64,000 nt of DNA from IMGVR_UViG_3300017991_005548:186001-250000; one strand, 5' to 3'. Numbered from the stretch's first letter, positions 1,445 to 58,171 are shown. A program made the numbers and translations. The notes: generated by a model not told the origin, from the sequence alone.

Positions 1445-1488
1445 AAAAAAAAGCACTCTTGTTATTTATTTCAATAACAGGAGTGCTT
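1445..1488 (-). terminator. Rho-independent terminator ending the actin operon; loop is GAAATA
   Basis: 16-bp stem AAGCACTCCTGTTATT/AATAACAAGAGTGCTT with 1 mismatch, followed by a T run. Confidence 0.8.
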
Positions 1489-1514
1489 TTCCCTATGGAG
1501 CTAGGTCTATAGTT

Positions 1515-1730
1515 TTATAGATCGTACAGATAATCCCCGATATTTATGAACTCAAAAGCTACATCATTTACTCTGTTCACTTTATCGGTTGTTTCTGAAT
1601 TCCTTTCACTACATTCACAAATTCCATCATACCAAGGAAAAGTACATTGCGTACATAATCCATTCGCTTTTGCCCAAGCGATATGATCTTTAAGATACTT
1701 TCGTTTCTCTTTCCGTTCTTGTTTAGTCAT
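1515..1730 (-). CDS. Small Cys-rich (zinc-binding) protein
   Basis: CTQC and GICEC motifs; coupled to the actin-like gene. Confidence 0.6.
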   Translation of the reverse strand: MTKQERKEKRKYLKDHIAWAKANGLCTQCTFPWYDGICECSERNSETTDKVNRVNDVAFEFINIGDYLYDL

Positions 1731-2818
1731 TATTTGTTTTTCTTTTGGAAATCTGCTTGCGCTCTAATGCAAGAACCCTGAGAAACAGAATAAAATGGAC
1801 TTTTGGAATGCCTTACTTGCCAGACATCAAATGGAAACTCAGAATCGTCCAAGCATTCCTTAAACATCTTACAATATCCCTTAGGCATCGAAGTCCCCCC
1901 AGAAATTACAATTTCAATTTCACCATCAATCTCTGCGTCTTTGGACCTAAATTCCTGAGACATATGATGGATAATACGATTGATTGTCTCTTGGTAGTAA
2001 ATTCTTAAAGCCGCGAGAACTCTATCACTCATATCAAATGATCCAAGATCAAGTTTCTTTTCTTTTTGCTTCAGAACTTTACTTGGAGCTACTCCTGTTA
2101 CTTTTGACGCTTGTTCGTCAATATAATCTCCACTCTTCGTAATTGAGAATGTGTTTAGACTCATTCCTTTCAAGCAAAGAGCAACATTTGTCATTCCACC
2201 TCCGCAACTAATTGCAACGCCAGTCAAAGGCATTTCACCGTCATCAGTTTTAGCAATAGGAGCGCAGTCATAGGCAACGGCCATACCTTCATTTACAGGT
2301 TTGGCATCATATCCCATTTGATCAAAGAAACTTTTAAGAACCATTTCGTGGAATCTGTTGTCCATATCTCGATCAAGAGGATTGGCAGGAACTGAGAACC
2401 TAAGTGGTTCGTTATCTACAATTGGTTCTCCAACAACAGCTTTGATAATGTAGAACAACAACTCAGAGGATTCTTTAAGATTTGGATTAAGAATACCATC
2501 TTTCATTGGTCGAACAACTTCACCTTTACCAATTGCATTTACAAGTCTCAAAGCGTCTTCGCCAACGATATAATATTTCTTTCCGACTTTTACATAAAGA
2601 TAGTCACTTCTATCCAAAAGATCGACAGCTTCTTCTGAAACGTCCAGTGGATAAAGCATATCTCTATGGAATCTGTTGACAAAAGTTCCATCTTCGGTTT
2701 GTCTTGCTACAACGATGTTGCTTGTTCCAACATCAACACCTACTCCAGGCTTGTACTTCTTTTTACCAGCCTTTTTCTCAACGGGAGTCTCATCTACATC
2801 AAGTATATCATCGCTCAT
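1730..2818 (-). CDS. Actin-superfamily ATPase (MreB/ParM-like)
   Basis: Phosphate-1 VGVDVGTSNIVV, connect VNEGMAV, phosphate-2 ISCGGGMTNV, adenosine ISGGTSMPKG. Confidence 0.85.
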   Translation of the reverse strand: MSDDILDVDETPVEKKAGKKKYKPGVGVDVGTSNIVVARQTEDGTFVNRFHRDMLYPLDVSEEAVDLLDRSDYLYVKVGKKYYIVGEDALRLVNAIGKGEVVRPMKDGILNPNLKESSELLFYIIKAVVGEPIVDNEPLRFSVPANPLDRDMDNRFHEMVLKSFFDQMGYDAKPVNEGMAVAYDCAPIAKTDDGEMPLTGVAISCGGGMTNVALCLKGMSLNTFSITKSGDYIDEQASKVTGVAPSKVLKQKEKKLDLGSFDMSDRVLAALRIYYQETINRIIHHMSQEFRSKDAEIDGEIEIVISGGTSMPKGYCKMFKECLDDSEFPFDVWQVRHSKSPFYSVSQGSCIRAQADFQKKNK

Positions 2819-2820
2819 TT

Positions 2821-3210
2821 TTAGTCCTCCAGATCAGTTAGTAAATCGATTGTATTGTTAGTCTGATCATTATCTTTCTTTGTTTCTTTGACTCCACCCA
2901 AATCATCAAAGTTAGATGATTTATCACCTCTTTGTATCGTCATTGTTTTTGCCAATTGGTCCATTGAGGAAGTGTCATCAAATTCATCTTCTTCTTTGGA
3001 AGAATCCTTATATATTATACCAGAATTCTTGGGTAAATCTATACCTTGGGACACTTTATTTGCTATTAAATTAGCCAAAGCTTCGAGGTCAACATTATTG
3101 CCCTGTTGATCTTCTTTTGGCAGTTCCGCTGGTTTAGACCTTTTTCTATAATCAGCCATTAGAATATCTTTGTTTGTGGTAGTGGGGATTGTTTCTGTTT
3201 TTTCTGCCAA
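2821..3210 (-). CDS. Hypothetical acidic protein, 129 aa (TTG start)
   Basis: Fills the operon directly upstream of the actin-like gene. Confidence 0.6.
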   Translation of the reverse strand: MAEKTETIPTTTNKDILMADYRKRSKPAELPKEDQQGNNVDLEALANLIANKVSQGIDLPKNSGIIYKDSSKEEDEFDDTSSMDQLAKTMTIQRGDKSSNFDDLGGVKETKKDNDQTNNTIDLLTDLED

Positions 3211-3362: not shown

Positions 3363-3395
3363 AAGGCATCTCCTTTTGGAGATATTATACAAATT

Positions 3396-6542: not shown

Positions 6543-6555
6543 CTCAATTCTCCTT

Positions 6556-6957
6556 TTATGGAAGTCTTGGGATCGAAGGAACGTTTACCATGCGAATTTT
6601 GCCAACTGAAGCGGCTTGAGGTCTGTCACTTACAATCTCTTCAATTGGTTCTTCATCTAACTCTTCGTCGTCTTCCACAACTTCGTCTTCAATAGCTTCT
6701 AACTGTCTTTTGGACTTAATACCGTCTGCGGCCATTGCCAAAAGGACTTCTGCCATTTCATCAAGTTTGTCATAGAATACTTCTAGTTGTTGTTTTCTAT
6801 CAGCCAAATCCTGAGCATCGATACAAGTCTGAACTTTGTCTTGGAAATCTCCCAACTCTTTCATAAGAGTCAAGACAGCGCTAGTACCCGCACCTTTTTT
6901 CTTCTTGCTTTCAGATCCAGCGATTGTGATAATATTACTGTTCATATTATTCTCCAT
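6556..6957 (-). CDS. Hypothetical protein, 133 aa
   Basis: ORF downstream of an AGG-N19-GAA motif. Confidence 0.7.
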   Translation of the reverse strand: MENNMNSNIITIAGSESKKKKGAGTSAVLTLMKELGDFQDKVQTCIDAQDLADRKQQLEVFYDKLDEMAEVLLAMAADGIKSKRQLEAIEDEVVEDDEELDEEPIEEIVSDRPQAASVGKIRMVNVPSIPRLP

Positions 6958-7004
6958 ACTAAATAATCATTTAGATTTTTTCTCAAAAATGCAAAGCCAT
7001 CCCT

Positions 7005-8653: not shown

Positions 8654-8655
8654 AC

Positions 8656-9677: not shown

Positions 9678-10421
9678 TTAAGATAGAATTTCTTGATAAT
9701 CAACTGAGTAGTTGACAGTTAGCCCAGCCGTGTTGGTTTCAATCTTTATCGCTTCGTCCAAAGAAAGAAGGTGAGGGTCACTATTGTAATGAGACAAATC
9801 AGTATTGGCAGTTTCATCAATTATTGCCGTTTCTGCATCCAAGCCAGGAACCGCAGTATCACTTGTGATTGATGCGGCGAAGCTTGTGTTCTCATTAAGT
9901 CCGAAAAGATGTCCAGCTATACTATACTGATCTGGCAAAGTTCCGTGCTCGTTAAACTCCAAATATTTAATTGTTCCTGAGCTAGGGGTAACTGTATATT
10001 CCCCAGTTGCGGCATCATATGCTACTGTAAAAGTCAAGCCCAATGCACTAAATGCTGAATTAGCATCCATTTGAGTTTCGAGTTCAGTTGCAAGTTCAGT
10101 ACCTGTGTAGAATCCAGTGTCTAATGTGATCTTCTGAGGTAACGTTTGAGGTGTCTGGAACCAAAGAAAATCATTTAAGTTTTCAAGAACGCTCCTGCCA
10201 CCAATAATACTTGCAGAATAATCTTTTGCGTTAGCATTGCTGAAGGCAAACTTAATGCCAACCACTTTCCAGTCGAGATTAGGAGAAAGTACTGTATCAA
10301 TAGCTGAAGCAGTAATATCAGCAACACCTTTGAGACTTTTTACGGTATCTTTCTTAGTTATCGCATCGACAGGAGTTGGCAAAGCTCTGAACACTCTATT
10401 AGGATAATATTTTATGGCCAT
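9678..10421 (-). CDS. Probable virion structural protein, 247 aa
   Basis: Ala/Thr/Ser beta-rich composition; first gene after an AGG-N19-GAA motif. Confidence 0.65.
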   Translation of the reverse strand: MAIKYYPNRVFRALPTPVDAITKKDTVKSLKGVADITASAIDTVLSPNLDWKVVGIKFAFSNANAKDYSASIIGGRSVLENLNDFLWFQTPQTLPQKITLDTGFYTGTELATELETQMDANSAFSALGLTFTVAYDAATGEYTVTPSSGTIKYLEFNEHGTLPDQYSIAGHLFGLNENTSFAASITSDTAVPGLDAETAIIDETANTDLSHYNSDPHLLSLDEAIKIETNTAGLTVNYSVDYQEILS

Positions 10422-10502
10422 TATATACTCCTTAGGTTAAATGAAAATAATGTTCGGTATATATTTCAAGAGATCACCCCCTTTACCCTTCTAGATATTA
10501 TA

Positions 10503-11394: not shown

Positions 11395-11469
11395 TGGTGC
11401 CCCTGCTGGGACTCGAACCCAGATTAGCAAGGTTAGAGCTTGCCGCTTTTGCCTTTAAGCTACAGAAGC
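11395..11469 (-). tRNA. Amber suppressor tRNA, anticodon CUA
   Basis: GCTTCTG TA GCTT AAAGGCAA AAGC G GCAAG CT-CTA-AC CTTGC TAAT CTGGG TTCGAGT CCCAG CAGGGGC A CCA: full cloverleaf with encoded CCA. Confidence 0.92.
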
Positions 11470-14304: not shown

Positions 14305-14628
14305 ATGAAAAGATGGGAAGCTGTAGGTAAAAATGATAGTGAGATCAATGAAGATGACATCAATTGGGAGTTGGTAAAAAACAGAGTCAAGTCTCTCCAA
14401 TTAAACAACAATGGTCAAATCATCCGTTTGCCTGACAATATGGAATATATACAAGGGAAGACTGCCAGTGCCAATCTTATGGGTGGAAAAGTTCAGATTG
14501 AATCTAGGTATGTTGGCATAAAAGTTGGAAATAATATAGTTAAGATACGAGTGGATGAAAAAACCAACGATATTTCCATAGAGGTAGAAGATGACCCCAA
14601 TTACATACCTAATCCAAAACAGGACTAG
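14305..14628 (+). CDS. Hypothetical protein, 107 aa
   Basis: GGAG SD before MKRWEAVGK; divergent TATAAT promoter at about 14273. Confidence 0.7.
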   Translation: MKRWEAVGKNDSEINEDDINWELVKNRVKSLQLNNNGQIIRLPDNMEYIQGKTASANLMGGKVQIESRYVGIKVGNNIVKIRVDEKTNDISIEVEDDPNYIPNPKQD

Positions 14629-15016
14629 AATTCCCATCAATACTTTGGATGCAAAGTCCTTAACATTTGGTATGGTGGCTCCAAACGAAACGGCCCAAAC
14701 CAATATCGTACAGCTTTATGTACCAGATGCCGCCGCAATTACCAATATTCGACTTGCATTAATCGATACTGGAGGTATAATGTTTGGATCTACTACTTTT
14801 GGAGTAGATAACAGATCGTTTATCGACAATAATGTAGTACCCGAATCATTTTTTCAAGGTGTTAGCGACAAAAGCGTAAATTCGCCTTACAATATATCAG
14901 TAGCAAACCTAAATAGATTAGCCAGTGAGTACATATATCTGAATGTGGATATCCCAATTGGTCAAACTTTTATCGCTGGAACAATAAGATATCAATGGCT
15001 TTTTGACTATGCATAG
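14591..15016 (+). CDS. Hypothetical beta-rich protein, 141 aa
   Basis: GAGGT SD; operon with the CCA enzyme. Confidence 0.65.
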   Translation: MTPITYLIQNRTRIPINTLDAKSLTFGMVAPNETAQTNIVQLYVPDAAAITNIRLALIDTGGIMFGSTTFGVDNRSFIDNNVVPESFFQGVSDKSVNSPYNISVANLNRLASEYIYLNVDIPIGQTFIAGTIRYQWLFDYA

Positions 15017-15023
15017 GGGTAAT

Positions 15024-19370: not shown

Positions 19371-19432
19371 AATATCAATATCCTCTAAAAACTAATTGAT
19401 GTTTAATTCCAATTAAGGTAGTAATAATCCTT

Positions 19433-20810: not shown

Positions 20811-21092
20811 TTACTCCTCAACATTAGCAACATCTTTTTCAGATGGTGCTTGGCCATGTTCCAGATGCATTTTCATTGCATCACGTAGCTTGAATTTATC
20901 TGTATATCTAACAGTAATTACTCCACCTGGATAAATGAGGTCCCAGCAGATTTCACCATCACAATCTTTATTCCTAATCATCCCTCCAGCATCACGCCAT
21001 CTGTCGATTAGTTCTTCCATTTCTCTTCTAAAAACAAAGACATCATTCTCTCTTTGTAAAAATGGCATCGCTATTTTAATAATCTTCATCAA
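20811..21092 (-). CDS. Leader-bearing protein, 93 aa (MMKIIKIA)
   Basis: First gene after an AGG-N19-GAA motif. Confidence 0.7.
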   Translation of the reverse strand: MMKIIKIAMPFLQRENDVFVFRREMEELIDRWRDAGGMIRNKDCDGEICWDLIYPGGVITVRYTDKFKLRDAMKMHLEHGQAPSEKDVANVEE

Positions 21093-21160
21093 ATATCCCC
21101 AAATGAATTGCTTATTCTAATTTATTCTTCAATATCAACCATCTAACCTTCATTAACACA

Positions 21161-23815: not shown

Positions 23816-23880
23816 TCACCCTTCCTTAATTCATAAGTATAGTCTTATTATACTTCTAAATAAGGTGTTAGTATCCCTAC

Positions 23881-25213: not shown

Positions 25214-25292
25214 TTTAATCTCTCCATTAAGGTCTTAATTCTAATTTATTCAAAATCTTTTCTTTTGATCCTTTAATCAGCAGTAATTGTTA

Positions 25293-25820: not shown

Positions 25821-25860
25821 AACAATATTAATTCAAAAATCTGTTCTTCTGACCCTTTGT

Positions 25861-27386: not shown

Positions 27387-27675
27387 TTTTTGTTTCTCCT
27401 TTTAGAGTTAATTTTTTGTCAATTTTCATTGACGGTTTTTTAACCAATTTGGTAAACGAAAACCAGCTTAACGCTACGATCTTTCTTCATTGATTTACTG
27501 AAAAAGTTGCCGTCATCTTATTAATCAAAACTGCAAACATTGAATTACTTACCAACTTGTTATATCCCTTTGTTCTATATTAATAAGGTGATTTCCTGCT
27601 TACTATACAAAAAAACCACGAAATATTGCTGATAAAAGCCATATTTCGTGGTTTTGGCACAAAAATGATTGTTGT

Positions 27676-28157: not shown

Positions 28158-28200
28158 AACAATTAATTCACTAATATAAAAAGAACTTCCTTTAAGAATA

Positions 28201-37755: not shown

Positions 37756-37841
37756 TTGGTAATCTCCAACAAAAAAGATCTATTATCATTTTTTCTCTTT
37801 TCTAAAAAAATGACACAGATCCCTTTTTTATGATAAAAATG

Positions 37842-42470: not shown

Positions 42471-42586
42471 GTTAATATCATCCTGTAATTAATGACTTTT
42501 CGAACTTATTCGTTAAAAATAAACAAAAGTCCTATTCCCATGTCATACTTAGTTCAACAAATATTATACACAAACCTTCATAAAAC

Positions 42587-45012: not shown

Positions 45013-45687
45013 TTATTTTTCGTAATCTTTTACCATTAACTTGACAAAGTCTTTGGGGTATCCAAGCTGTCTTGACCAGTAATCGTAGATCTTCTTACGA
45101 TTCTTTGGACTGATCTCAGCAAGCTTTACCCAATCATCAGCGGAAGCTTCAACAACTTCATCTTCTTCGTCTTCGGCTTCTACCACTTCATCTTCTTCGG
45201 AAGCTTCAACAGTTTCTTCGGAAGCTTCAACAGTTTCGTTTTCATCAGTTGCACATTTTTGAGTTGGACACTCTTCGCCACCTTCGATAACTTCTTCCTC
45301 AACTTCCATTTCGAATTCCTCTACAGGAGCATCTTCAGTTTCTCCACCAAGACACTCAACAGCATCTTCAATGGCATCCTGTGCTCTTTCGAGACATTCA
45401 ACTGCGGCATCTTCGCCTTCAGCTACTTCTTCGACTTGACCTTCGAATTCAACACCGTCAGTTTCAACAGCATCAGTCTCTGCAAGCTCATCGCCACCCA
45501 TAGCCATGCCACAACCTTGTGCGGCTTCTTTTTCTTCGTAATTAGCCACTACTTGTTTTGCGGCTTCGAAAAGATCATCTCTATATTGTTCCTGTTCGGA
45601 AACTTCTCCTTCATTATTTGAAGCGGTTTTCACCATAACTTTGGGAAGCCAATCCGTAGAACCTTTTCCAGAAGGCATAATTCTCAT
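45013..45687 (-). CDS. Acidic hypothetical protein, 224 aa (scaffold-like)
   Basis: VKTASN near the N-terminus; E-rich repeats. Confidence 0.75.
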   Translation of the reverse strand: MRIMPSGKGSTDWLPKVMVKTASNNEGEVSEQEQYRDDLFEAAKQVVANYEEKEAAQGCGMAMGGDELAETDAVETDGVEFEGQVEEVAEGEDAAVECLERAQDAIEDAVECLGGETEDAPVEEFEMEVEEEVIEGGEECPTQKCATDENETVEASEETVEASEEDEVVEAEDEEDEVVEASADDWVKLAEISPKNRKKIYDYWSRQLGYPKDFVKLMVKDYEK

Positions 45688-45749: not shown

Positions 45750-45953
45750 TTATTCTAAATAAGAGTCCTTTTTCCCTACATCTTTCTTGTCATATTTGTC
45801 TTGGCAGGTTTGCCATGCATCTTGAGGACTGTCCCCTTCATCAAGACACTCTTTCTGACAGTCCATCTTTTTCCTTTCTGGACGCATCAATTCTTGAGCA
45901 CCTTCATAAAAGGCTTTCTTTTTTAAATGCCTTTTCAAATTGAAAATAGCCAT
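45750..45953 (-). CDS. Hypothetical protein, 67 aa
   Basis: In operon context. Confidence 0.55.
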   Translation of the reverse strand: MAIFNLKRHLKKKAFYEGAQELMRPERKKMDCQKECLDEGDSPQDAWQTCQDKYDKKDVGKKDSYLE

Positions 45954-47574: not shown

Positions 47575-49959
47575 TTACTCTCCAAAATCCAATATTTTAT
47601 CTAATTCATACTTCTTAAAAAGTTCCTGGGCTTCCTCTTCATTGAGTGACTCTATCTTTGCCTTCGCAAACTGCAAGAAGTCAACAGAATACTTTTCCAA
47701 AAGAACGGGAGCGTATTTTCCAATAGCTTCCTCTAATTCACTATCAATATCAAGACCAAGCTTGATTGACAAATACAACGCTCTCAATATAATGAATGGG
47801 TTGAATGACAATACATCATCTGCATCCATGACCGTTTCGATATAATTATCTCCATTAAAAGGAGTGATGAACGATCCAGTGTAAGGGTTATATCCTCTAG
47901 CATTAATAGTGAAATCCTTGTTGCAAATATCATGCAATACATGGCTGGAAGAATCAAGATCCTGTTTTTTCATCCATCTCTCGATAGTTGGGATCTTTTG
48001 TCCTCCATTGAAACAAATCTTCACGCCTTTGTGATTAAAACAAAAACATCTAGTTGCTGGATCAATCTCAGAGACCTGTTCTCCCAATTCTTCAGCCAAC
48101 AAACTTCCGAATTTATGGCAGTTTTGGGATGAATCACTTGTAAATTCAAGTTCCTCAACTTCTGGAGATCTGTTCCCAAAAGATTTCTCTCTTGCATAAG
48201 AACCGATAGCATAAACATCTTTGATATCGTATTCATGAGCCACACTCTTTGCGGCATCCATAATGCAACTAATAGCATCTTCAAGCGTTGGTCTGCAACC
48301 AACAACCTTTGACATAATCTCTCTTAGTTGTTCATCATTGTTCTGAATAGCATCTTCGACTTTTTCAATTTCTTCACTACCAACTCCCCTATGAATCCAG
48401 CAGGAGTATATCTCTTCTCCATCGGACTCTCCCAAAGAAAACATATCGACTCCAATAGGACTGCGCCCCATTGACTTTTCAATAACTGACAACATATCTT
48501 CACTACAAACAATCCTAGTTGCCTTCATATCGCCCCTAAGAATGATTGATCGTATTTTTCTCAACATATCAACAATATGTCCAAGCCCACCCGAAGCAAA
48601 ACGTTTTGCAGGATGAGTGTTGCTTAAGTCTCTTGTTGAATCAAACCAACTCTCTGGTTTGAACCTTGGCTCGATCCATCTGTAATAAAACCCCTTGATG
48701 TCATATGTTGGGTTATATCTAGGTTGTGACTTTATCCAGTCCTCTTCTTCTGAAAAACATTCATCTCTGTCATCCCAGGCCATGACTCTGTCACCTAACC
48801 CAGGAATAGTTGATCCATCAGAAATTTCGAGATTATTGTACCACCCAAAAACTGTCGCCATCTTTGTCATCTTTGATGCTTGCTTTAAAGGCATCATCAA
48901 TGGTTGTGGTCTAGTATCTTCCAGAAGATCTTCAGTGATTCTATATCCAGTATCGTCTTTGAGCCTGTCTTTGTCAAGCAATTCTTCAAAAATGAGATCA
49001 GGATCTAATTCCCAATCACCTTCAGTAAATTTCCTCAACTGAACTTCATAGATGTCATGTTCTGGAGATAGGTCTGGAGGGAGTGGAGCCTGATACTGTC
49101 TGCCAAGCATTTCTTCGATTGCTCGATTTTGATATTGATGGGCGATCATACCCCAATCTGGTTGGGCCTGGAAATTTGCTCCATGATCACCATATCTTCC
49201 TGACAAATCAGATCCTGAGGGAGGATAGAATGGAAAGTGGCTTTGAGCTTCTTTATACCAATTATTTGAGGCTCCTTGCCTTAAACTTAGTTCACCCTCT
49301 ATGCTGTATTTCTGCTGAATCTCTCTCATGGCAGATTCAAGTAATGCTGTCTCAACTTGAGTTGGACCTGCTTCGTCTTCTGCCCCTTTAGCATGAGTGG
49401 CTTCGTGAGCCATTGTAGCGGCCATGTGAGCTATCATAAGATCTTGTCTTAGCTCTGCATGCATTTCTGGTGGAACGATGTCCTGAAGGTTCCTAAAGGA
49501 TTGCTCCATCTCATTACGAGTGTCTGCTACATTCAGTCCTAGAACTGATCCTCCTTTACTTTCTAGATCAGCATATACTTGCTGGATTTCATTACGGATA
49601 GTTTCTTGGTCTTTCTCTTCTTTAGTGTCATACGCTCGAAGCATTCCATCTTCTTCGACAATTTCATAACCTCTTGATTCAAGTCTTTTTTGAAGTTCTT
49701 GGGTTTTGACTGCCCTATCTAGTGACGGAACATAAACTCCATAAACACCAGCTTTCGCGAAGTTGAACATATAAACAATATTCTGCAAAAGATTTGAGTC
49801 GAATCGATTGACTAAGTCAACTGATTTCTGGGCATCGCCAAATTGGGAAGAGATGTTGGAGATGTTAACACTTGGGCTTCCGATCAAACTACCTTTATAC
49901 TCTGGAGCATCACCAGAGTAATACCCTCCGTAGTCTTGAGATACTTTTATGATTTTCAT
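47575..49959 (-). CDS. Leader-bearing (MKIIKVSQ) zincin-like metallopeptidase fused to a degenerate CCA/PAP-like nucleotidyltransferase
   Basis: AHEATHAKGAEDE; C-terminal YAIGSYARE..ELEF, NKDFTINA, FNPFIILRA. Confidence 0.7.
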   Translation of the reverse strand: MKIIKVSQDYGGYYSGDAPEYKGSLIGSPSVNISNISSQFGDAQKSVDLVNRFDSNLLQNIVYMFNFAKAGVYGVYVPSLDRAVKTQELQKRLESRGYEIVEEDGMLRAYDTKEEKDQETIRNEIQQVYADLESKGGSVLGLNVADTRNEMEQSFRNLQDIVPPEMHAELRQDLMIAHMAATMAHEATHAKGAEDEAGPTQVETALLESAMREIQQKYSIEGELSLRQGASNNWYKEAQSHFPFYPPSGSDLSGRYGDHGANFQAQPDWGMIAHQYQNRAIEEMLGRQYQAPLPPDLSPEHDIYEVQLRKFTEGDWELDPDLIFEELLDKDRLKDDTGYRITEDLLEDTRPQPLMMPLKQASKMTKMATVFGWYNNLEISDGSTIPGLGDRVMAWDDRDECFSEEEDWIKSQPRYNPTYDIKGFYYRWIEPRFKPESWFDSTRDLSNTHPAKRFASGGLGHIVDMLRKIRSIILRGDMKATRIVCSEDMLSVIEKSMGRSPIGVDMFSLGESDGEEIYSCWIHRGVGSEEIEKVEDAIQNNDEQLREIMSKVVGCRPTLEDAISCIMDAAKSVAHEYDIKDVYAIGSYAREKSFGNRSPEVEELEFTSDSSQNCHKFGSLLAEELGEQVSEIDPATRCFCFNHKGVKICFNGGQKIPTIERWMKKQDLDSSSHVLHDICNKDFTINARGYNPYTGSFITPFNGDNYIETVMDADDVLSFNPFIILRALYLSIKLGLDIDSELEEAIGKYAPVLLEKYSVDFLQFAKAKIESLNEEEAQELFKKYELDKILDFGE

Positions 49960-50028
49960 ATTTTAACTCAGGAAAATTGTACAATTGCATTTTTATTCTC
50001 ACTTTTCCGTTGAATGTCCTATTTGGGC

Positions 50029-50436: not shown

Positions 50437-50446
50437 TGTTATACTC

Positions 50447-50916: not shown

Positions 50917-51978
50917 TTATCTTGCTACTTGAATACCATTCTTTTCGCAAAATTCGATGGCGTATATTGAGAATACTCCAGCACTCAATCCGTAGTTGTC
51001 GTTGTCTCCAACAATTGCAGTTATTACTCCGATAACCTTACCATCATGACGATTGATAATTGGACCGCCACTGTTTCCTGGTAATATTGCGAGATCTAAA
51101 AACATGTATAGAGGTGCTCCATTATGAGAATAGATCTCCCTGTCAAGAGAGCTAACATAACCGAAAGTTGTGTTGTTTTCGAATCCATGAGGACTTCCAA
51201 CTGCAAAAATTTCATCTCCGACATTAACGATTTGATCGAATTCAAAAGGTTTTGCATTGATATCGGCCTTCAGTAAAGCTAGGTCTTTAGCTCCATCAAA
51301 GGCTATAACCTCTGCGTTAACCATCTGATCTCCATCTTTGATCAGTACCCTTATCATATCCTCATATTCAGAGAAGTCAAGCGAGCTTTCAGTATTTTTG
51401 TTGTAATTTTTTACGACATGGGCGCAAGTAAGGAAATAATTAGGGGCTACGCAGAAAGCAGAACCCGTTTCCTCAGTATTCGTGCTGAAGTTCTGTGACT
51501 TTACAACAAACGTCTTTTCAAGAGCCTCATCAACTTGATTTGGTTCTGGTTCAGCTTGCGCTACTCTAGAGATCCATTTGACAAGAACTCCCCTCTCTTC
51601 CATCTTTCTTCGATATTGTTGAGCCGATTCCAAAGATGGGAAAGTTTTATAGCCACCTCTAACCTTTAACTTCCAAACCTCTTTATCACCAGAATTATTA
51701 GTAAGGTTTCTGAAGATGTCTAAATCTCTTTCTCTTCTTTTGTAATCGTCACCCTCATCTTTGTAAGATCCAGGTTGAGATTCTTCGTTCCTTGACCAAT
51801 CTCCCCAATCACCTTGTTGACCTGGGAGTTTATATTGTTTGCCAGTCAATACATCCCATATGGTATGCACATTATTGAAGGGCATAACGGATTTTGGAGT
51901 AGTGGGACTTAAGCCAGAGCCTGGATATAGAATCTCAGGCATTGTTGTGCGATAAGCTTTTTTCTTTTGTTTGCCCAT
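50917..51978 (-). CDS. Trypsin-like (HtrA-type S1) serine protease with N-terminal extension
   Basis: GSAF, LTCAHVV, DLALLK, AVGSPHG, GNSGGPI. Confidence 0.88.
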   Translation of the reverse strand: MGKQKKKAYRTTMPEILYPGSGLSPTTPKSVMPFNNVHTIWDVLTGKQYKLPGQQGDWGDWSRNEESQPGSYKDEGDDYKRRERDLDIFRNLTNNSGDKEVWKLKVRGGYKTFPSLESAQQYRRKMEERGVLVKWISRVAQAEPEPNQVDEALEKTFVVKSQNFSTNTEETGSAFCVAPNYFLTCAHVVKNYNKNTESSLDFSEYEDMIRVLIKDGDQMVNAEVIAFDGAKDLALLKADINAKPFEFDQIVNVGDEIFAVGSPHGFENNTTFGYVSSLDREIYSHNGAPLYMFLDLAILPGNSGGPIINRHDGKVIGVITAIVGDNDNYGLSAGVFSIYAIEFCEKNGIQVAR

Positions 51979-52036
51979 TTTTGATACCTAAATTAAGTGT
52001 ACTCTAACTTATTCAAAAAAAGTACACTTTGAACCT

Positions 52037-52867: not shown

Positions 52868-52910
52868 AATAAAACTCCCAATTTAGTCTTGGTGTTGTTT
52901 ATTATACAAA

Positions 52911-54046
52911 TTAACCGAGCAGATCTAACCCTATGTTTTTGTCTTGCATAAAGGTGTTGATGTGTTTAAGGAAAAGAGCTTTCTCTTGTGGAGTAAAAAA
53001 TGCAGATGCAAGTAAACTACTCAACTCATCACTTGTCGCAGGGATATCATCCTCGTCAAACGATCTTTTGAATGAAACAAATGCTCGACTTACTTTCTGG
53101 TCATCTACTTTTTTTTTGTAGCTTCAACGATTTGACGGTTTTTGAAATAATTGGATGCAAAGAGTCTATCTTCCTCATCCATTAGATCTTCTTCGTCTAA
53201 GTCAGTTACTTCAAAATCCTCACCCACTTCGTCAAGACCGATTTGGTAAGTTACAATGCCCTGACTAAGTTTTGAATCATCAAATGAAGCTAATGAAAAT
53301 GGAATTTCGCCATGATGTTTGGACATGAAGTATTCCAAATCGTCAGCGATATCTTCCAAAGTCAAACTACTTGTATCGTTTGTACCAGTTATTTCAAGTT
53401 TACCAACAGCGGTAGGGGTTCCACCTATGTCAATCTCTTCGTAGTAGACTTCTTTAACAGCTTCTAGAACATCATCGTCGTCTCCGAGGTCTTCTATTGG
53501 AAAATCAGGATCGATTTCATTAATTTCAAAGTCCTGTCCATAAGGATCATCTAGGATATCATCCATATTGTCTTCAAGACTACGATCACGTTCCACATAA
53601 TCCCAATCAATATCCATTGACTGAGCTTTCTTCTCGAAAGCTATTTTAAGGCCATCTTCGCTTTTGATTTCCCACCATCTTTGTCGCTTGGGAGTTTCTG
53701 AGGCTGTCTCATACTCCTCTCCTTCGATATTGTAATCGGCCAATCGTTTCTCTTCAAGCTTATTCATATCACCTTCATAAGCTTGAGCATTTCTGTGTTT
53801 AGAACCAAATTCATCTTTGGCTTCATCTAGGTTTTTCTCAATAACAACTTCTGCACTACCAGTTCTGTTGTTTTCAAGAAGCTTTTCCATAACTGAATCT
53901 TTGTCACCTACGTGATGAGGATCTAACTGCTTATCTGTAATTTCCTCTGGAATGTCGCCATGGGATTCTGACAACATGCGATCAGTATGGGCATCTTCAT
54001 CTAATTTTTCATAGACTACAAATTTATATTCAGACATTTTATGCAC
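52911..54046 (-). CDS. Acidic head-module protein, 313 aa, with a predicted -1 frameshift extension of 65 aa
   Basis: ACA AAA AAA AAG TAG at 53105-53119; the -1 frame is open from 53108 to TAA at 52911. Confidence 0.7.
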
Positions 54047-54096
54047 TCTCCTGAAGAATATTTCTTATTTGTTCTTCTTCTATTATAAAAAATCCT

Positions 54097-55932
54097 CTAA
54101 AATCTCATCCTAACAGTTACAGGTTCTGGAAGAGCAGGGTTCAGTCCATCAGTAGCAGAAGAAACAGCCCCTACTAAGCAATCAACTACATCATCTGTCT
54201 TCACATCTGCATTTTTATCTGGCAGAAGAGAAATTCCTCTTGCAATTCTTTTGAATTTTAAGTGTTGCATCTCTGCTAACATATATGAAGCATGTCCATC
54301 ATCATCATAAAGATAAATTTCAGGATTTGGTTGATACTCCATCATCATCTTCATATTTCTATATAATTTCTGTTTAACACTTCTGTTATATTGAATCTTT
54401 TGACAATTTACTCCATGACTCCTCAAAAACTGCAAACTGTGTACAGACTGAAAGTCATCATAAGTAACTCTCAATGGTCTAAAGATTTTGCAAATAGTTA
54501 GAACATCTCTATCAATCTCATGGAATTGTAATCCAATACCTGGAACTGGTTTCCAGATCCATACGCCAGCTAATTCAACCATCCATCTCTTTTCCCCCTG
54601 ATTGTTTCTATATTTCTTAGCGGCAATCAAAACCATACTGAAGTTATTTCCGCCATTGGCTGGATCAACATGAGCATAATAATTGTATCCTGGTGCTGGT
54701 TTGGCATGAGGGCCAAGATCTGCCCTTACACATCTTTCAAGCAATCCTTCCTCAAAATAGTTACCATAAATACCGCCACTAGCCCATTGAGCGCCATACT
54801 CAATAGCAAACATTTCTGGGTTACTCTCTCTATCACCAACCATCTCTTTGTTATAAAAATCAATATCATCATTTACACACCAAGTTGGCAACTGAAACGA
54901 TAAGATAGAATCATCTTCTAATGATCTTCGATACATATCATAGAAAATACCCATCCTATTGTTCGGTGATGATATCATCACTATTCGAGCCGCATTATAT
55001 TTGTAGAATTTAGATAATGATGGCTTTAATCTGTTGAAGAAATAGGTCCCTGTTACCTTACCACTCTCATCATAGAATGCAATCTCGTCAAACAGAATAA
55101 GAATAGCACTATATCCAGCAAGTGAGTCTGGATTACTATGACCACAAAGAAGTAGAATAGATCCCGCAACTTCAATGTCAACTCCCTGACTTTTCTTTTC
55201 TAAGTCAGAGTCAGTATACAAACGAATCTCCGAAGAAATTGATTTAGCGATTCGTCCTTTGAAAAAAGGAGAGTTTCTAATTCTAGCCTGAATCTGTCCA
55301 AACAAACGTCCAGCCTGAGATTGTGACAAGGCAACATTAATAATTGCAATTTCATCATCACTAGGTAGATTATAGTAGCTATGGGGATTACCCTCATTAA
55401 TAACTAGTAACTTGTACGCTTCATACACAGTTATGATTGAAGCCATCAAGGTTTTACTTCCACGTCTACCTAAGACAAGATGCAACATACTAAAATATTC
55501 AGGTCGTCTGTCTTCTGGCTTCTTCCCCTCATTTTCATCATTCCCCTTGGCCTTCTCATCGTGGAACCTGTCCATCTCGATCATTTTTTTGATAACCTCT
55601 TTGATGTTCCTTTCATAAGTAACACCTTCAAGAGTCTCATCTTCTTCATTACCGTAAAGCCACTCCCACTCTTCTTTATTGAGATGAAGGTCTTCATTTC
55701 CTATAGTGTTCTTGTAGAAGCACTTAAGGATAACTCTTTGGGAAGTCCAGAGATCAAGCTGATTCTCTTCTGATGGTAAGTTTAGGTAGTCTGGATGATC
55801 ACAAAACGTTATGATATCGACTATCTCTTTGTAACCCTTGTTCTTTTTCAGAATCGGGTTTTTGGTATTAATCTGAAGTATTGCTTCTTCAAGTGGATTA
55901 ATAGCTTTCTGCTTCTTCTGGCGACTCGACAT
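54097..55932 (-). CDS. terL: Terminase large subunit
   Basis: Walker A GRRGSKT, Walker B ILFDEIAF, MISSP, nuclease HVDPA and DDVVDC. Confidence 0.9.
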   Translation of the reverse strand: MSSRQKKQKAINPLEEAILQINTKNPILKKNKGYKEIVDIITFCDHPDYLNLPSEENQLDLWTSQRVILKCFYKNTIGNEDLHLNKEEWEWLYGNEEDETLEGVTYERNIKEVIKKMIEMDRFHDEKAKGNDENEGKKPEDRRPEYFSMLHLVLGRRGSKTLMASIITVYEAYKLLVINEGNPHSYYNLPSDDEIAIINVALSQSQAGRLFGQIQARIRNSPFFKGRIAKSISSEIRLYTDSDLEKKSQGVDIEVAGSILLLCGHSNPDSLAGYSAILILFDEIAFYDESGKVTGTYFFNRLKPSLSKFYKYNAARIVMISSPNNRMGIFYDMYRRSLEDDSILSFQLPTWCVNDDIDFYNKEMVGDRESNPEMFAIEYGAQWASGGIYGNYFEEGLLERCVRADLGPHAKPAPGYNYYAHVDPANGGNNFSMVLIAAKKYRNNQGEKRWMVELAGVWIWKPVPGIGLQFHEIDRDVLTICKIFRPLRVTYDDFQSVHSLQFLRSHGVNCQKIQYNRSVKQKLYRNMKMMMEYQPNPEIYLYDDDGHASYMLAEMQHLKFKRIARGISLLPDKNADVKTDDVVDCLVGAVSSATDGLNPALPEPVTVRMRF

Positions 55933-56749
55933 AATATTCCTCCAATATATAAACACAACCATTGTCTGATGGACAAAAGGTCAGAATTTTATTTCCAACC
56001 TTATATATTTCAAACAAATGAGTCGCATCTCCTTCAGAGGAAAGCATATGCACAGTATTGTCACTTAAAAAGAAAAGTTTGTTCTTGACATAATATATGT
56101 CTTTTAGGTCTTTGCAGTCATCGATAATTGTGTACGTTGAGTTTTTTCGTATCCCCCTTAAGCAATTGTTACCACTGTCTGCAAAACAGACAGTTTTTCC
56201 CATTATTGCAACTCCAGTTGGTTTAGAAATCCTCGTATTTTTTAAATTTGATATTGAGAATCCAGCCTTACCACAACCTATAAGTGGAAAGGCGTTCTCC
56301 TCATTCATTATAAAGCATCTGTGACAATTTGTAGTGCTCCAGATGACTTGATTTTCTAATGAAGTTACATAAGTCCTTGAGTCGCTTCTTCCAAGGACTT
56401 TTCTTCTAAATTGTTTAGCACTGTTTTTTGAGATCAAATTCTCAAAATCCATCAACTCCAAATCGACTTTGTGAATTCGGCTACCACCTTCTGAAACTAT
56501 ATATAAACAATCATAACTGGAATTATAGCATATCGAACTGAAAGTTGAAAAGTCTGGCTTCTCAGTATATGTGAGTTCATAACGCCAATCAGGATTGCAG
56601 TCGCCATTATTCATCTTTCCTATGCCATCATCATGTAGGAAAAACAGATTATCCCCAACACAACAAAAATCCTTGATCTCGAAGTTGATCTCGAAATTTC
56701 GTTGTTTTCGGGTGGTAAGGTTCTTTTCTGTAAGTTTATAGATCATCAA
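55898..56749 (-). CDS. Beta-propeller (NHL-like) protein
   Basis: KPTGVAI...FADSGNNCLRGI. Confidence 0.6.
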   Translation of the reverse strand: MMIYKLTEKNLTTRKQRNFEINFEIKDFCCVGDNLFFLHDDGIGKMNNGDCNPDWRYELTYTEKPDFSTFSSICYNSSYDCLYIVSEGGSRIHKVDLELMDFENLISKNSAKQFRRKVLGRSDSRTYVTSLENQVIWSTTNCHRCFIMNEENAFPLIGCGKAGFSISNLKNTRISKPTGVAIMGKTVCFADSGNNCLRGIRKNSTYTIIDDCKDLKDIYYVKNKLFFLSDNTVHMLSSEGDATHLFEIYKVGNKILTFCPSDNGCVYILEEYYVESPEEAESY

Positions 56750-58103
56750 TGATTTCGAACTGATCTTCTACCATTCTACAAATGTGATTACCAAAGTTAA
56801 TATCAACTTCCAAATGATCACCAAATGGTATAACTTGGACAACATGTCCTGTTTGTTGATAATAGCTTTCCAAAGTTGGATCAGTGCAAACAACAATTGC
56901 GCCTTTTCCATTTTGGTAGTAATCCTGTTCAGAGTATTTTGATCCTGCTTCTTTCGTCATTGAAGATGGATTAACAAACCAAGCAGGTTTGTCTCCTTTA
57001 AAAGAAACAGTAAAAGTTGATGCCGCCTTAGATTCTTTATCTATTGTTTCGAAAGTAGGGCTTTCATAGGGAAAGTCTTTAGGTATGTCTGGTAAACTAC
57101 GTCCCTCTAAATGTAATACAGATGAATTGTCTCCTACACAGCAATGCCCTATCTTCTCCACAATTGGCTTCCAATATGCTTGATAGAACTCCAGGGAGTG
57201 ATATGGATACATATCCCTGATTTTGCCCCCAGGTCTTATGTCTTGCAAAAACAAATCTTTCCCAATATCTAATGCGATTACAATATCGTCACCATCAAAT
57301 AAATCAATACCATGGGAATGTTTTACCCATACTGCACTTGGATGATTATTTTCAACTGCTGAACAAGCACGTTTGCCATACTCATTCATCAACTCTTGGA
57401 TTGCATCAGCGTCGATGTCTCCCCAAGCATCTTGATAAGAAGTAAGAGATTGGGCTTGCTTTATTAAAGACTTAGATGAGGCCATCGGCATTTCCATTGG
57501 ATCGGCCATTGGCATCCCTCCCATCGGATCGGCCATCGGATCAGCCATTGGATCAGCCATTGGGACATCTTCCTCTTCTTCACTTTCTTTTTTGTCCTTG
57601 GCTAAATCCTCAGAATAATATTTGTGGACAAGTTCCTTTATTTTAGAAATAATTCCGTTCAGTCTTTCTTCGCTTTTTTCTTTATCTTCTTCTTCAGCGA
57701 GTTCATCTTCGTCCATGTTGTCTATCACAAACAAAATTTCACTAACAACAGCTTTTGCTTCGAAGTAATTTACTTTCTTCTGATTCTTATCCTCTTCATC
57801 CATGCCATCCGCCGTATCCACGAGACCATCATAAATTTCTTCATAATGATCTGCTAATCTCGTCTCTGCCGAAACATCTTCTACTAATGGCTTTTGCAAA
57901 TCCTCTATAGCGAATTTTTCTAAAGCGTCAATGTGATAAGAATGTTTCTCCGCAATTTGTTTGGCATCGCTATATGCTTCCCAGGCGTAACGATACAAAG
58001 GTTCTGAGAATTTTGTAAGGTTACTGTGATGGATGGATGAGAATTTGTTTATTGTAAAACAATATCTGTCTTTTATCTTGAAAACTTTAATGTGTTTGTT
58101 CAT
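56736..58103 (-). CDS. Hypothetical protein, 455 aa, with MADP repeats and KxA motifs
   Basis: First gene after an AGG-N19-GAA motif. Confidence 0.75.
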   Translation of the reverse strand: MNKHIKVFKIKDRYCFTINKFSSIHHSNLTKFSEPLYRYAWEAYSDAKQIAEKHSYHIDALEKFAIEDLQKPLVEDVSAETRLADHYEEIYDGLVDTADGMDEEDKNQKKVNYFEAKAVVSEILFVIDNMDEDELAEEEDKEKSEERLNGIISKIKELVHKYYSEDLAKDKKESEEEEDVPMADPMADPMADPMGGMPMADPMEMPMASSKSLIKQAQSLTSYQDAWGDIDADAIQELMNEYGKRACSAVENNHPSAVWVKHSHGIDLFDGDDIVIALDIGKDLFLQDIRPGGKIRDMYPYHSLEFYQAYWKPIVEKIGHCCVGDNSSVLHLEGRSLPDIPKDFPYESPTFETIDKESKAASTFTVSFKGDKPAWFVNPSSMTKEAGSKYSEQDYYQNGKGAIVVCTDPTLESYYQQTGHVVQVIPFGDHLEVDINFGNHICRMVEDQFEIIDDL

Positions 58104-58114
58104 AGCTAAAACCT

Positions 58115-58158
58115 AAAAAAGGCTGTATCGTGTTTATTTCCACAAATACAGCCTTTTT
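58115..58158 (-). terminator. Terminator after RNR; loop is GAAATAAA
   Basis: AAAAAGGCTGTAT-T-TGTG/CACG-ATACAGCCTTTTT stem. Confidence 0.8.
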
Positions 58159-58171
58159 ACCTTTTATATGA

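What the first reader, a model, noticed from the sequence alone, without database searches (positions are those of the whole stretch)
1465..58162. Strict AGG-N19-GAA bipartite promoter class marking the morphogenesis genes
Seen: 19 minus-strand copies (18 with a 19-nt spacer, 1 with 18) just upstream of TerL, decoration/MCP, the 1305-aa/protease unit, neck-like genes and most leader-bearing genes. It was not found before CCA, GT4, the actin operon or the AAA ATPase. Established: the Bacillus sigma-H consensus (AGGA...GAAT) has an 18-19 nt AGG-to-GAA spacing. Inference: late promoters read by a phage-encoded or host sigma-H/ECF-like factor.
Basis: partly seen in the sequence, partly recalled or inferred. 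Interest (0 to 1): 0.68.

Follow-up and report, generated by a model that had tools for sequence, protein, structure and literature searches.

The report
Sigma-H-type late promoters of huge phage
The repeated AGG-19 nt-GAA signal is a real family of late-gene promoters in a roughly 524-kb bacteriophage; it matches the Bacillus sigma-H promoter consensus, and the phage carries its own sigma-H-like factor that most likely reads it.

Summary
The window holds 18 minus-strand AGG-N19-GAA copies and one N18 copy, upstream of start codons. In the window's 5.2 kb of non-coding DNA, N19 occurs 17 times against 0-4 at every other spacer from 14 to 24. Coding DNA shows no excess. An unbiased dyad scan of 296 upstream regions ranks AGG-N19-GAA first.

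The extended consensus is R-n-AGG-a-WWW, a T-rich stretch, then GAA-t-W-A. This equals the Bacillus sigma-H consensus RNAGGAWWW / RNNGAATWW. A purine lies 7 nt after the -10-like hexamer in 83% of sites. That position is 20-29 nt before the start codon in 30 of 52 sites, and on the start codon itself in several.

The motif sits at orthologous sites in phages whose TerL is 50-76% identical. No sigma gene lies in the 296-kb record, but that record is a fragment. An overlapping 476-kb contig of the same phage carries four sigma genes. One is a 280-aa sigma-H-like protein between the clamp-loader and sliding-clamp genes. Two distant phages with this sigma show the same spacer-specific enrichment.

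A minority of sites are embedded in terminator hairpins. No transcript data could be obtained, so the start sites and the sigma assignment are inferred.

The parts
1467..1494 (-). Promoter-like site (AGG-N19-GAAnWA) upstream of the 232-aa gene 736-1434. It is embedded in a strong hairpin followed by a U-run.
   Evidence: PWM score 21.8, predicted +1 26 nt before the ATG. Hairpin -23.5 kcal/mol, z -5.3.
6977..7004 (-). Promoter-like site upstream of the 129-aa gene 6556-6945, which is followed by the 1048-aa gene.
   Evidence: PWM score 19.7, +1 25 nt before the start codon.
10462..10489 (-). Promoter-like site upstream of the 247-aa gene 9678-10421, followed by the 336-aa and 499-aa genes.
   Evidence: PWM score 17.1, +1 34 nt before the start codon.
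14506..14533 (+). Candidate plus-strand site upstream of the 141-aa gene and the CCA/poly(A)-polymerase operon (14591-17616). It is a weaker match and lacks the purine at -2.
   Evidence: PWM score 15.4, +1 51 nt before the start codon. PolyA_pol and HD domains in 15024-17030.
19404..19431 (-). Promoter-like site upstream of the 585-aa gene 17613-19370.
   Evidence: PWM score 23.0, +1 27 nt before the start codon.
21122..21149 (-). Promoter-like site upstream of the 92-aa gene 20811-21089 and the genes downstream of it.
   Evidence: PWM score 21.3, +1 26 nt before the start codon.
23851..23878 (-). Promoter-like site upstream of the 141-aa gene 23390-23815.
   Evidence: PWM score 22.0, +1 29 nt before the start codon.
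25246..25272 (-). The single N18 copy, upstream of the 132-aa gene 24815-25213. It matches the flanking consensus well, but N18 is not enriched in this genome.
   Evidence: N18 is enriched in relatives.
25829..25856 (-). Promoter-like site whose predicted +1 lies 2 nt before the ATG of the 175-aa gene 25293-25820. The transcript would be leaderless or nearly so.
   Evidence: PWM score 19.2, +1 to start distance 2 nt.
27570..27597 (-). Promoter-like site 177 nt upstream of the 173-aa gene 26865-27386. That gene is followed by a protein resembling the HK97 Phage_capsid family (25931-26794).
   Evidence: PWM score 16.9. Phage_capsid E = 3.8e-5 over 2-279 of 280 model positions.
28164..28191 (-). 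Promoter-like site whose predicted +1 is the A of the ATG of the 83-aa gene 27906-28157. The transcript would be leaderless.
   Evidence: PWM score 22.7, +1 to start distance 0 nt.
37797..37824 (-). Promoter-like site upstream of the 1305-aa gene (33838-37755) and the 1856-aa protein with a protease domain. It is embedded in a hairpin followed by a U-run, just after the portal gene.
   Evidence: PWM score 19.9. Hairpin -18.2 kcal/mol, z -4.1. Protease domain.
42506..42533 (-). Proximal of two tandem promoter-like sites upstream of the 342-aa / 443-aa / portal operon (41442-42470, 40106-41437, 37842-40064).
   Evidence: PWM score 19.6, +1 29 nt before the start codon. Portal identified.
42550..42577 (-). 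Distal tandem site for the same operon. Its spacer contains a TGTGTATAAT sequence, which resembles a sigma-A extended -10 element.
   Evidence: PWM score 23.5. Sequence shown.
45750..45777 (-). Promoter-like site upstream of the 224-aa gene 45013-45687.
   Evidence: PWM score 20.5, +1 56 nt before the start codon.
49993..50020 (-). Promoter-like site upstream of the 794-aa gene 47575-49959.
   Evidence: PWM score 15.1, +1 27 nt before the start codon.
52009..52036 (-). Promoter-like site upstream of the 353-aa protease-like gene 50917-51978. A moderate hairpin spans the -10 element.
   Evidence: PWM score 22.6. Hairpin -11.7 kcal/mol, z -2.3. Protease match to a PHROG family.
54069..54096 (-). 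Promoter-like site just downstream of TerL, upstream of the 310-aa gene 53105-54037. A site at the same position is kept in relatives, with an N19 or N18 spacer.
   Evidence: PWM score 16.3. Orthologous sites in L009, L012, L013 and L015 (N19) and in L007 and L011 (N18).
56006..56033 (-). Promoter-like site 67 nt upstream of TerL (54097-55932), inside the 3' end of the upstream ORF. It is kept only in the closest relatives.
   Evidence: PWM score 21.8. TerL identified. L006 and L007 keep the site.
58135..58162 (-). Promoter-like site upstream of the 455-aa gene 56736-58103, embedded in a terminator hairpin that follows the ribonucleotide-reductase gene. AGG and GAA are invariant at N19 in all nine orthologous sites, while the stem sequences differ.
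   Evidence: PWM score 15.8. Hairpin -21.4 kcal/mol, z -4.4. Alignment A2. All nine orthologues fold at -17.6 to -25.8 kcal/mol.

Best explanation
These elements are bipartite promoters of the late (virion and packaging) gene class of an uncultivated phage of about 524 kb.

Anatomy. The -35 element is R-n-A-G-G-a-W-W-W, with AGG at about -34 to -32. A T-rich stretch precedes the -10 element G-A-A-t-W-A, at about -12 to -7. Transcription is predicted to start at a purine 7 nt further on. This gives leaders of about 20-30 nt that carry the Shine-Dalgarno sequence, or leaderless mRNAs.

Mechanism (inferred). Host core RNA polymerase is redirected to these promoters by a phage-encoded sigma-H-like sigma factor of 280 aa. 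Its gene lies outside the window, at G001 163344-164186 on the minus strand, between dnaX-like and dnaN-like genes. That gene is itself preceded by sigma-A-type promoters. The result would be an early-to-late cascade.

Subset. A few sites (window 1494, 37824, 58162, and weakly 52036) place the promoter spacer in the 5' arm and the -10 element in the loop of an intrinsic-terminator hairpin. Read-through from upstream would stop there, and late transcription would restart inside the hairpin.

Shown: the motif, its strict spacing, its position, its conservation, and the presence of the sigma gene. Inferred: the start site, the late timing, and which sigma reads the motif.
For: 1. The enrichment is specific to one spacer, one strand and non-coding DNA. 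AGG-N19-GAA is the top dyad in an unbiased scan of 296 upstream regions: 51 against 9.6, z = 13.

2. The weight matrix gives R at -2 (90%), A-G-G, then W-W-W. It gives GAA, T (56%), W (96%), A (91%). Position +34 is A or G in 86% of the 47 PWM training sites; over the 52 GAAnWA sites of the composite the figure is 43 of 52, 83%.

3. The predicted +1 is 20-29 nt from the start codon in 30 of 52 sites, and 0-2 nt in three. In two other phages many sites place +1 exactly on the start codon.

4. The motif matches the sigma-H consensus RNAGGAWWW / RNNGAATWW as quoted from DBTBS in PMC8510167.

5. The motif is conserved at orthologous positions in phages with TerL 50-76% identical, while the spacer varies.

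6. The sigma-H-like gene. Its five best NCBIfam hits are SigH-group models (PRK08295 and TIGR02859; three are named SigH), at 2e-25 to 2e-17, against 3e-8 for the generic sigma-70/ECF model. The only solved structure matched by the family profile is the sigma-H factor 3MZY, at 2e-13, including the K-x-[IV]-D-N-x-x-x-R-I-R-K-K helix of region 4.

7. G012 and G014 carry this sigma at 56% and 54% identity. Both show AGG-GAA enrichment in upstream regions only at N19 and N18: 17 and 10 against 4.0, and 12 and 6 against 2.5.

8. The class is concentrated in the structural region, composite coordinates 375-475 kb. A TTGACA...TATGTT class dominates the region that holds the sigma genes.

9. No phage RNA polymerase family was found in the 296-kb record (G000) searched; the left 212 kb of the composite was not screened.
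Against: - No transcript or 5'-end data exist.
- The sigma-H-like protein scores well below the curated SigH cut-offs (89.5 against 212 bits). Pfam does not detect its region 4.
- The phage carries three other sigma-70-family genes. G012 and G014 each carry at least one other sigma. Co-occurrence therefore does not single out the sigma-H-like protein.
- The host is unknown, so a host sigma-H cannot be excluded.
- The R of the RNNGAAT consensus is not kept (39% purine).
- Some structural genes, such as the portal gene, are preceded by TGTATAAT-type sequences instead.
- Whole-record pattern counts in G012-G015 were not above the reversed-pattern control. The signal appears only when the analysis is restricted to upstream regions.
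Confidence: 0.6

Rival explanations
1. The promoters are real, but one of the other three phage sigma-70-family proteins reads them. These proteins are 276, 271 and 282 aa and resemble RpoD, RpoS and RpoH. The sigma-H-like protein would serve another purpose, such as manipulating host stationary-phase or sporulation genes.
For: Three more sigma genes lie on the same phage. G012 and G014 each also carry another sigma. An AGG-N19-GAA site lies upstream of the operon that contains the 276-aa sigma, which could reflect autoregulation. Published work reads phage 'sporulation-like' sigmas as tools for manipulating the host (PMC9429907).
Against: The motif equals the sigma-H consensus at both elements. 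Only the 280-aa protein is sigma-H-like; the sigma-H model gives at most 20 bits against any of the others. Only two strong promoter classes were found. The second is sigma-A-like and would suit RpoD-like sigmas.
Confidence: 0.17
2. The promoters are read by the host's own sigma-H, which the phage would induce or stabilise. The phage would need no dedicated late sigma.
For: The motif is a near-perfect match to the Bacillus sigma-H consensus. Strong Shine-Dalgarno sequences and TGnTATAAT-type promoters are compatible with a Firmicute-like host.
Against: The host is unknown. A scan of bacterial genomes found no relatives. The phage clade conserves its own sigma-H-like gene in a fixed position within the replication module. 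From general knowledge, host sigma-H is scarce in growing cells, and no lytic phage is known to rely on it.
Confidence: 0.12
3. The element is not a pair of sigma-contact sites. It would be the binding site of a late activator or repressor, for example a dimer on the partly palindromic TTATT-n-GAATAA. Alternatively it would be an RNA or DNA hairpin signal for termination, processing or a hairpin-type promoter.
For: Several sites lie within strong hairpins followed by U-runs, and that hairpin is conserved across nine phages. The -10 region is often flanked by short inverted repeats.
Against: Taken over all sites, folding energy equals that of random intergenic DNA: -11.2 against -11.7 kcal/mol. 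Most sites have no hairpin. The two conserved blocks sit at -35/-10 geometry, with a purine at +1 and leaderless start codons exactly at +1. No conserved TATAAT-type -10 element accompanies the AGG box. No Rfam family matches.
Confidence: 0.06

Closest known systems
Bacillus sigma-H (Spo0H) promoters: -35 RNAGGAWWW and -10 RNNGAATWW (DBTBS consensus as quoted in PMC8510167). From my own memory of Britton et al. 2002, 11-12 nt separate the two elements.
   Same: The AGG core is preceded by R-n and followed by A/T. The GAAT core is followed by A/T. AGG and GAA are 19 nt apart here and 18-19 nt apart in relatives. A purine start is predicted a few nt downstream.
   Different: These promoters lie in a phage genome upstream of virion genes. 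The spacing is fixed at 19 in this phage. The R of RNNGAAT is not kept. The third base after GAAT is A in 91% of sites. Dependence on any sigma-H is untested.
Bacillus phage SPO1 middle promoters read by the phage sigma gp28 (AGGAGA-N17/18-TTTnTTT; from my own knowledge, not checked here)
   Same: A phage-encoded alternative sigma redirects host core polymerase. The -35 element starts with AGG and is followed by a T-rich stretch before the start site.
   Different: Here the -10 element is GAAtWA. The candidate sigma resembles sigma-H. No similarity to gp28 was tested.
T4 late transcription: gp55, gp33 and the gp45 sliding clamp acting on TATAAATA promoters (review PMC2988020, listed)
   Same: It is a dedicated late promoter class placed close upstream of virion genes. 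In this phage the candidate late sigma is encoded between the clamp-loader and clamp genes, and it ends in a conserved hydrophobic tail.
   Different: T4 late promoters have no -35 element, whereas these have a strict one. Clamp binding here is only a conjecture. The complex prediction gave no answer.
Phage-encoded 'sporulation-like' sigma factors, such as the SigF/G-like proteins of SP10, Goe3 and Eldridge (PMC9429907)
   Same: They are sigma-70-family genes in phages that annotate as sporulation sigmas. JGI names this family 'sporulation-specific sigma factor'.
   Different: Those were interpreted as manipulating host dormancy and were dispensable for lytic growth. Here about 50 matching promoters sit upstream of the phage's own structural genes, which points to a role in the phage's own programme.

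Membership tests
Sigma-H-type promoter | -35 element RNAGGAWWW | tested here: met
   Weight matrix of 47 sites: R 90%, A 93%, G 97%, G 97%, then A/G/T mixed, then W 86%, 84% and 78%. Consensus taken.
Sigma-H-type promoter | -10 element RNNGAATWW | tested here: met
   GAA 95-97%, T 56%, W 96%, A 91%. The leading R is not kept (39% purine).
Sigma-H-type promoter | Fixed spacing, with AGG and GAA 18-19 nt apart | tested here: met
   Only N19 is enriched in this phage. N19 and N18 are enriched in G012 and G014. The reference spacing comes from memory and was not verified in a paper.
Sigma-H-type promoter | Transcription starts a few nt downstream and depends on sigma-H | not testable with these tools
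   Support is indirect only: a purine at +34 and start codons that coincide with it.
SigH (Spo0H) protein family, for the 280-aa phage protein | Score above the curated SigH equivalog cut-off | tested here: not met
   Best score 89.5 bits against a cut-off of 212; TIGR02859 gives 68.7 against 294.8. The protein is sigma-H-like, not an orthologue.
SigH (Spo0H) protein family, for the 280-aa phage protein | Closer to sigma-H than to other sigma groups, with sigma regions 2 and 4 present | tested here: met
   The five best NCBIfam hits are SigH-group models. Pfam Sigma70_r2 scores 25.4 bits against a cut-off of 24. The only solved-structure hit is the sigma-H factor 3MZY, aligned through region 4.
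Sigma-A (sigma-70) housekeeping promoter | TTGACA-N17-TATAAT, or the extended TGnTATAAT | tested here: not met
   The sites lack both hexamers. A separate TTGACA...TATGTT / TGTATAAT class exists elsewhere in the genome.
Intrinsic terminator, for the hairpin-embedded subset | Stable stem-loop followed by a U-run | tested here: met
   Window sites 1494, 37824 and 58162 fold at -18 to -23.5 kcal/mol, z -4.1 to -5.3, and are followed by U-runs. Nine orthologues were folded. This does not hold for most sites.
T4-type late promoter | A -10-only TATAAATA element with no -35 element | tested here: not met
   A strictly spaced AGG box is required, and the -10 element is GAAtWA.

The most novel reading that the evidence does not exclude
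The sigma-H-like late sigma may be tethered to the phage's own sliding clamp through its conserved C-terminal tail. The tail is [LIVM]-P-[LIVM]-F-[LIVM], 0-2 residues from the end, in 116 of 119 family members. The gene always lies between the clamp-loader and clamp genes. If so, late transcription from the AGG-N19-GAAT promoters would be coupled to DNA replication. That would be a convergent, sigma-70-family version of the T4 gp55/gp33-gp45 mechanism in a widespread clade of huge phages.
Probability: 0.15. Interest if true: 0.8.

Novelty: new member of a known kind. Interest (0 to 1): 0.5.

Why it matters
- It gives a testable regulatory map for an uncultivated phage of about half a megabase. 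Most of its virion proteins match no known family. Genes that carry this promoter can be provisionally labelled late or structural.
- It links a large metagenomic protein family (more than 440 members, annotated 'sporulation-specific sigma factor') to a cognate promoter in the phages' own genomes. These sigmas may therefore run the phage programme rather than manipulate host sporulation.
- It shows that the 296-kb 'provirus' record is a fragment. The absence of a regulator from such a record is not evidence that the phage lacks it.
- The terminator-embedded promoters and leaderless starts are compact design features that could serve as regulatory parts.

Tried and rejected
- Unrestricted weight-matrix iteration drifted onto the coding-sequence GAA periodicity. 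I redid it with training on non-coding DNA only.
- Searches of the 296-kb record for Sigma70_r2, Sigma70_r4, Sigma70_r4_2, TIGR02937, RNA polymerase beta and T7-type polymerase found nothing useful. The weak r4_2 hit at G000 90106 is an HTH/endonuclease-like protein, not a sigma.
- PHROGs and Pfam give no hit for most downstream genes.
- I tested the idea that the hairpin is a general feature of the sites and rejected it. Mean folding energy equals that of random intergenic DNA.
- The genome-contig scans with the TerL alignment and with the sigma alignment found no bacterial relatives, so there is no clue to the host.
- The TerL-related contigs are too fragmentary to contain the sigma gene.
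- Whole-record pattern counts in G012-G015 did not exceed the reversed-pattern control. The enrichment appeared only after gene calling and restriction to upstream regions.
- tblastn of the other sigmas against cultured phages gave at most 28% identity and no clue to the host.
- Complex prediction for the clamp with the C-terminal 66 residues of the sigma gave 'no answer' (score 0.00). This counts neither for nor against binding.
- Rfam finds only the tRNA in the window.
- The 11-12 nt spacer of the sigma-H consensus could not be confirmed in the paper library. It rests on my memory.

Full report
**1. The observation**

The bare pattern AGG-N19-GAA occurs 51 times in the window. Shuffled sequence gives 45 +/- 6, so taken as a whole it is not unusual. 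The signal appears once position is taken into account.

I called genes with a simple codon-usage-filtered ORF caller. With those calls, the window has 5,204 nt of non-coding DNA.
- In that non-coding DNA, the minus strand holds 17 N19 copies. Every other spacer from 14 to 24 gives 0-4.
- Coding DNA shows no excess: 28 copies against 15-40 at other spacers.
- In the whole 296-kb record the non-coding minus-strand counts are 47 at N19 against 8-16 at other spacers.
- Adding the extension GAAnWA gives 38 against 1-6. Ten control dyads of similar composition show nothing.

N18 is not enriched in this genome. The minus-strand negatives are correct for the GT4 gene, the Volactin-type actin operon and the AAA ATPase.

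**2. Anatomy**

A weight matrix trained only on non-coding hits gives three conserved parts:
- R (90%), n, A (93%), G, G, then a mixed base, then W-W-W.
- An unconserved stretch that becomes T-rich.
- G-A-A, then T (56%), W (96%), A (91%).

Seven nucleotides after that last A the base is A or G in 86% of the 47 PWM training sites, and in 43 of 52 sites (83%) when all GAAnWA sites of the composite are counted. If GAAtWA is read as a -10 hexamer at -12 to -7, this purine is +1 and AGG lies at -34 to -32.

The predicted +1 is 20-29 nt from the start codon in 30 of 52 sites. This leaves room for the Shine-Dalgarno sequence. At window sites 28191 and 25856 the predicted +1 falls on, or 2 nt before, the ATG.

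An unbiased scan of all trinucleotide pairs and spacers over 296 upstream regions ranks AGG-N19-GAA first: 51 against 9.6, z = 13. A second class, TTGACA-N~16-(TGC)TATGTT, resembles sigma-A promoters and comes next.

**3. The genome context changes the picture**

The 296-kb record holds no sigma-70-family gene, no RNA polymerase beta subunit and no T7-type polymerase. However, it is a fragment.
- TerL and the 443-aa protein are 100% identical to a 476,248-bp IMG/VR record, G001.
- Base 1 of the 296-kb record corresponds to G001 base 212,354.
- The composite is 508.7 kb, with uniform GC content and strand bias, 60 tRNA genes and a tmRNA gene.
- The same phage was assembled elsewhere as contigs of 523,871 and 524,692 bp.

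I joined the two records only in scratch space, for counting.

The left part carries three sigma-70-family genes of 276, 271 and 282 aa. They resemble RpoD, RpoS and RpoH.

It also carries a fourth sigma gene, found with the SigH model. This 280-aa protein has the following properties:
- Its five best NCBIfam hits are SigH-group models (PRK08295 and TIGR02859; three of them are named SigH), at 2e-25 to 2e-17. The generic sigma-70/ECF model gives only 3e-8.
- A profile of 15 family members matches exactly one solved structure in the whole Protein Data Bank, the sigma-H factor 3MZY, at 2e-13. The alignment runs through the recognition helix of region 4.
- It scores far below the curated SigH cut-offs. 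It is therefore sigma-H-like and not an orthologue.
- Its gene lies between a dnaX-like clamp-loader gene (3e-106) and a dnaN-like clamp gene. This order is kept in homologues of 55-57% identity.
- The operon is preceded by sigma-A-type sequences.

**4. Match to a known specificity**

DBTBS gives the Bacillus sigma-H consensus as RNAGGAWWW (-35) and RNNGAATWW (-10), as quoted in PMC8510167. The phage matrix reproduces both, except for the R of the -10 element.

I recall that gap from Britton et al. 2002 but could not confirm it in the paper library.

**5. Comparative evidence**

Ten IMG/VR contigs encode a TerL that is 50-76% identical.

Upstream of the homologue of the 455-aa gene, all nine distinct contigs keep AGG and GAA exactly 19 nt apart. 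The bases between them differ freely.

The site just after TerL is kept with an N19 spacer in four contigs and an N18 spacer in two.

Two much more distant records, G012 (186 kb) and G014 (161 kb), carry the sigma-H-like gene at 56% and 54% identity. In their upstream regions AGG-GAA is enriched only at N19 and N18:
- G012: 17 at N19 and 10 at N18, against a mean of 4.0.
- G014: 12 at N19 and 6 at N18, against a mean of 2.5.

In both records many sites place the predicted +1 exactly on the start codon. This independently supports the inferred start position.

Both records also carry another sigma gene. Co-occurrence therefore supports the link between promoter and sigma but does not single out which sigma.

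**6. Distribution and gene content**

The class is concentrated at composite coordinates 375-475 kb, which includes the window. The TTGACA class dominates 0-175 kb and 275-325 kb.

Downstream genes that could be identified:
- TerL.
- The operon ending in the portal gene, which has two tandem sites.
- Two protease-domain proteins.
- A tail tube protein and beta-helix, NHL-repeat and DUF285 proteins.
- Two homing-endonuclease-like genes and a glycosyltransferase.

Most of the other downstream genes match nothing. The label 'late/structural' fits. 'Strictly morphogenesis' is too narrow.

**7. Hairpins**

Several sites looked as if the spacer pairs with the sequence downstream. Over all sites this is not general: mean energy is -11.2 kcal/mol, against -11.7 for random intergenic windows.

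A subset is clear. Window sites 1494, 37824 and 58162 fold at -18 to -23.5 kcal/mol (z -4.1 to -5.3) and are followed by U-runs. Site 52036 is weaker.

At the site orthologous to 58162, all nine phages have a strong hairpin of -17.6 to -25.8 kcal/mol with unrelated stem sequences.

In these hairpins the 5' arm is the promoter spacer, the loop is the -10 element, and the 3' arm is the start of the transcript. The simplest reading is an intrinsic terminator for upstream transcription with a promoter nested inside. A transcript that starts inside the hairpin lacks the 5' arm and so is not terminated. This reading is inferred.

**8. Mechanism and rivals**

My best reading is an early-to-late cascade. 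Early sigma-A-type promoters express the replication module, which includes the sigma-H-like gene. That sigma then directs host core polymerase to about 50 AGG-N19-GAAtWA promoters.

Rivals:
- Another phage sigma reads them (0.17).
- The host's own sigma-H reads them (0.12).
- The element is an activator site or a structural signal (0.06).

**9. What could not be done**

The host is unknown. The complex prediction for a clamp-sigma contact gave no answer.

**10. Verdict**

This is a real and conserved promoter class. It is a new member of a familiar kind: phage late promoters read by a phage sigma. It adds three features of interest: sigma-H-type specificity, promoters nested in terminators, and leaderless starts. 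It also raises an untested possibility of coupling to the sliding clamp.

Noticed in passing
whole record; G000:1 = G001:212354: The 296-kb 'provirus' record is a fragment. Overlap with a 476-kb IMG/VR record gives a composite of 508.7 kb. Contigs of 523,871 and 524,692 bp carrying the same sigma gene exist elsewhere. The left 212 kb has the same GC content and strand bias, 14 further RNA genes (13 tRNAs and a tmRNA), and four sigma genes.
   Followed up: yes
window 11395-11469 (-): There is a suppressor-type tRNA with anticodon CTA, which reads TAG. TAG still ends 86 of 568 called genes. Several ORFs that end in TAG stay open for more than 100 codons beyond it, for example window 22355-22684. 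This may reflect selective read-through.
   Followed up: partly
L032:3347-4186 (-) and family P0001-P0120: 116 of 119 members of the sigma-H-like family end in [LIVM]-P-[LIVM]-F-[LIVM], 0-2 residues from the C-terminus. They also share an N-terminal extension of about 75 aa that bacterial sigma-H lacks. The gene always lies between dnaX-like and dnaN-like genes. This raises a possible clamp-binding tail; the complex prediction gave no answer.
   Followed up: partly
composite 0-175 kb and 275-325 kb; examples listed: A second promoter-like class, cTTGACA-N~16-(TGC)TATGTT, resembles sigma-A promoters but has an unusual -10 element. It dominates the region that encodes the sigma and replication genes. 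It may be read by host sigma-A or by one of the RpoD-like phage sigmas.
   Followed up: partly
window 1730-2818 (-): An actin-like protein matches the Pfam Volactin family (3e-63), a family I recall being defined from a haloarchaeon (not checked here). It is encoded by a phage that has bacterial-type Shine-Dalgarno sequences and promoters.
   Followed up: no
L008, L009, L011, L013, L015, directly after the terminator/promoter hairpin upstream of the 455-aa gene homologue: In five relatives the U-run of the hairpin runs straight into TTGTATAAT, which resembles an extended -10 element. That intergenic region therefore stacks a late promoter, a terminator and a sigma-A-type promoter within about 70 nt.
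   Followed up: no
window 56736-58103 (-) and 25931-26794 (-): The 455-aa protein has a weak Tubulin_3 hit (E = 0.0037). The 287-aa protein matches the HK97 Phage_capsid family over the full model length but just below the cut-off (3.8e-5). Which protein is the major capsid protein remains open.
   Followed up: no
window 58172-61675 (-): The ribonucleotide-reductase gene (PHROG match 6.6e-97 over residues 6-323) encodes 1167 aa. Unrelated short hits around residues 343-413 suggest an inserted element such as an intein.
   Followed up: no
five upstream regions of the composite that lack either promoter class: The sequence CAGTAGTACTCTTT recurs in five upstream regions. It may be another regulatory motif.
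   Followed up: no
G000 261791-274621 (-): A 4276-aa ORF is preceded by a good AGG-N19-GAA site (PWM score 21.8), with the predicted +1 29 nt before the start codon.
   Followed up: no
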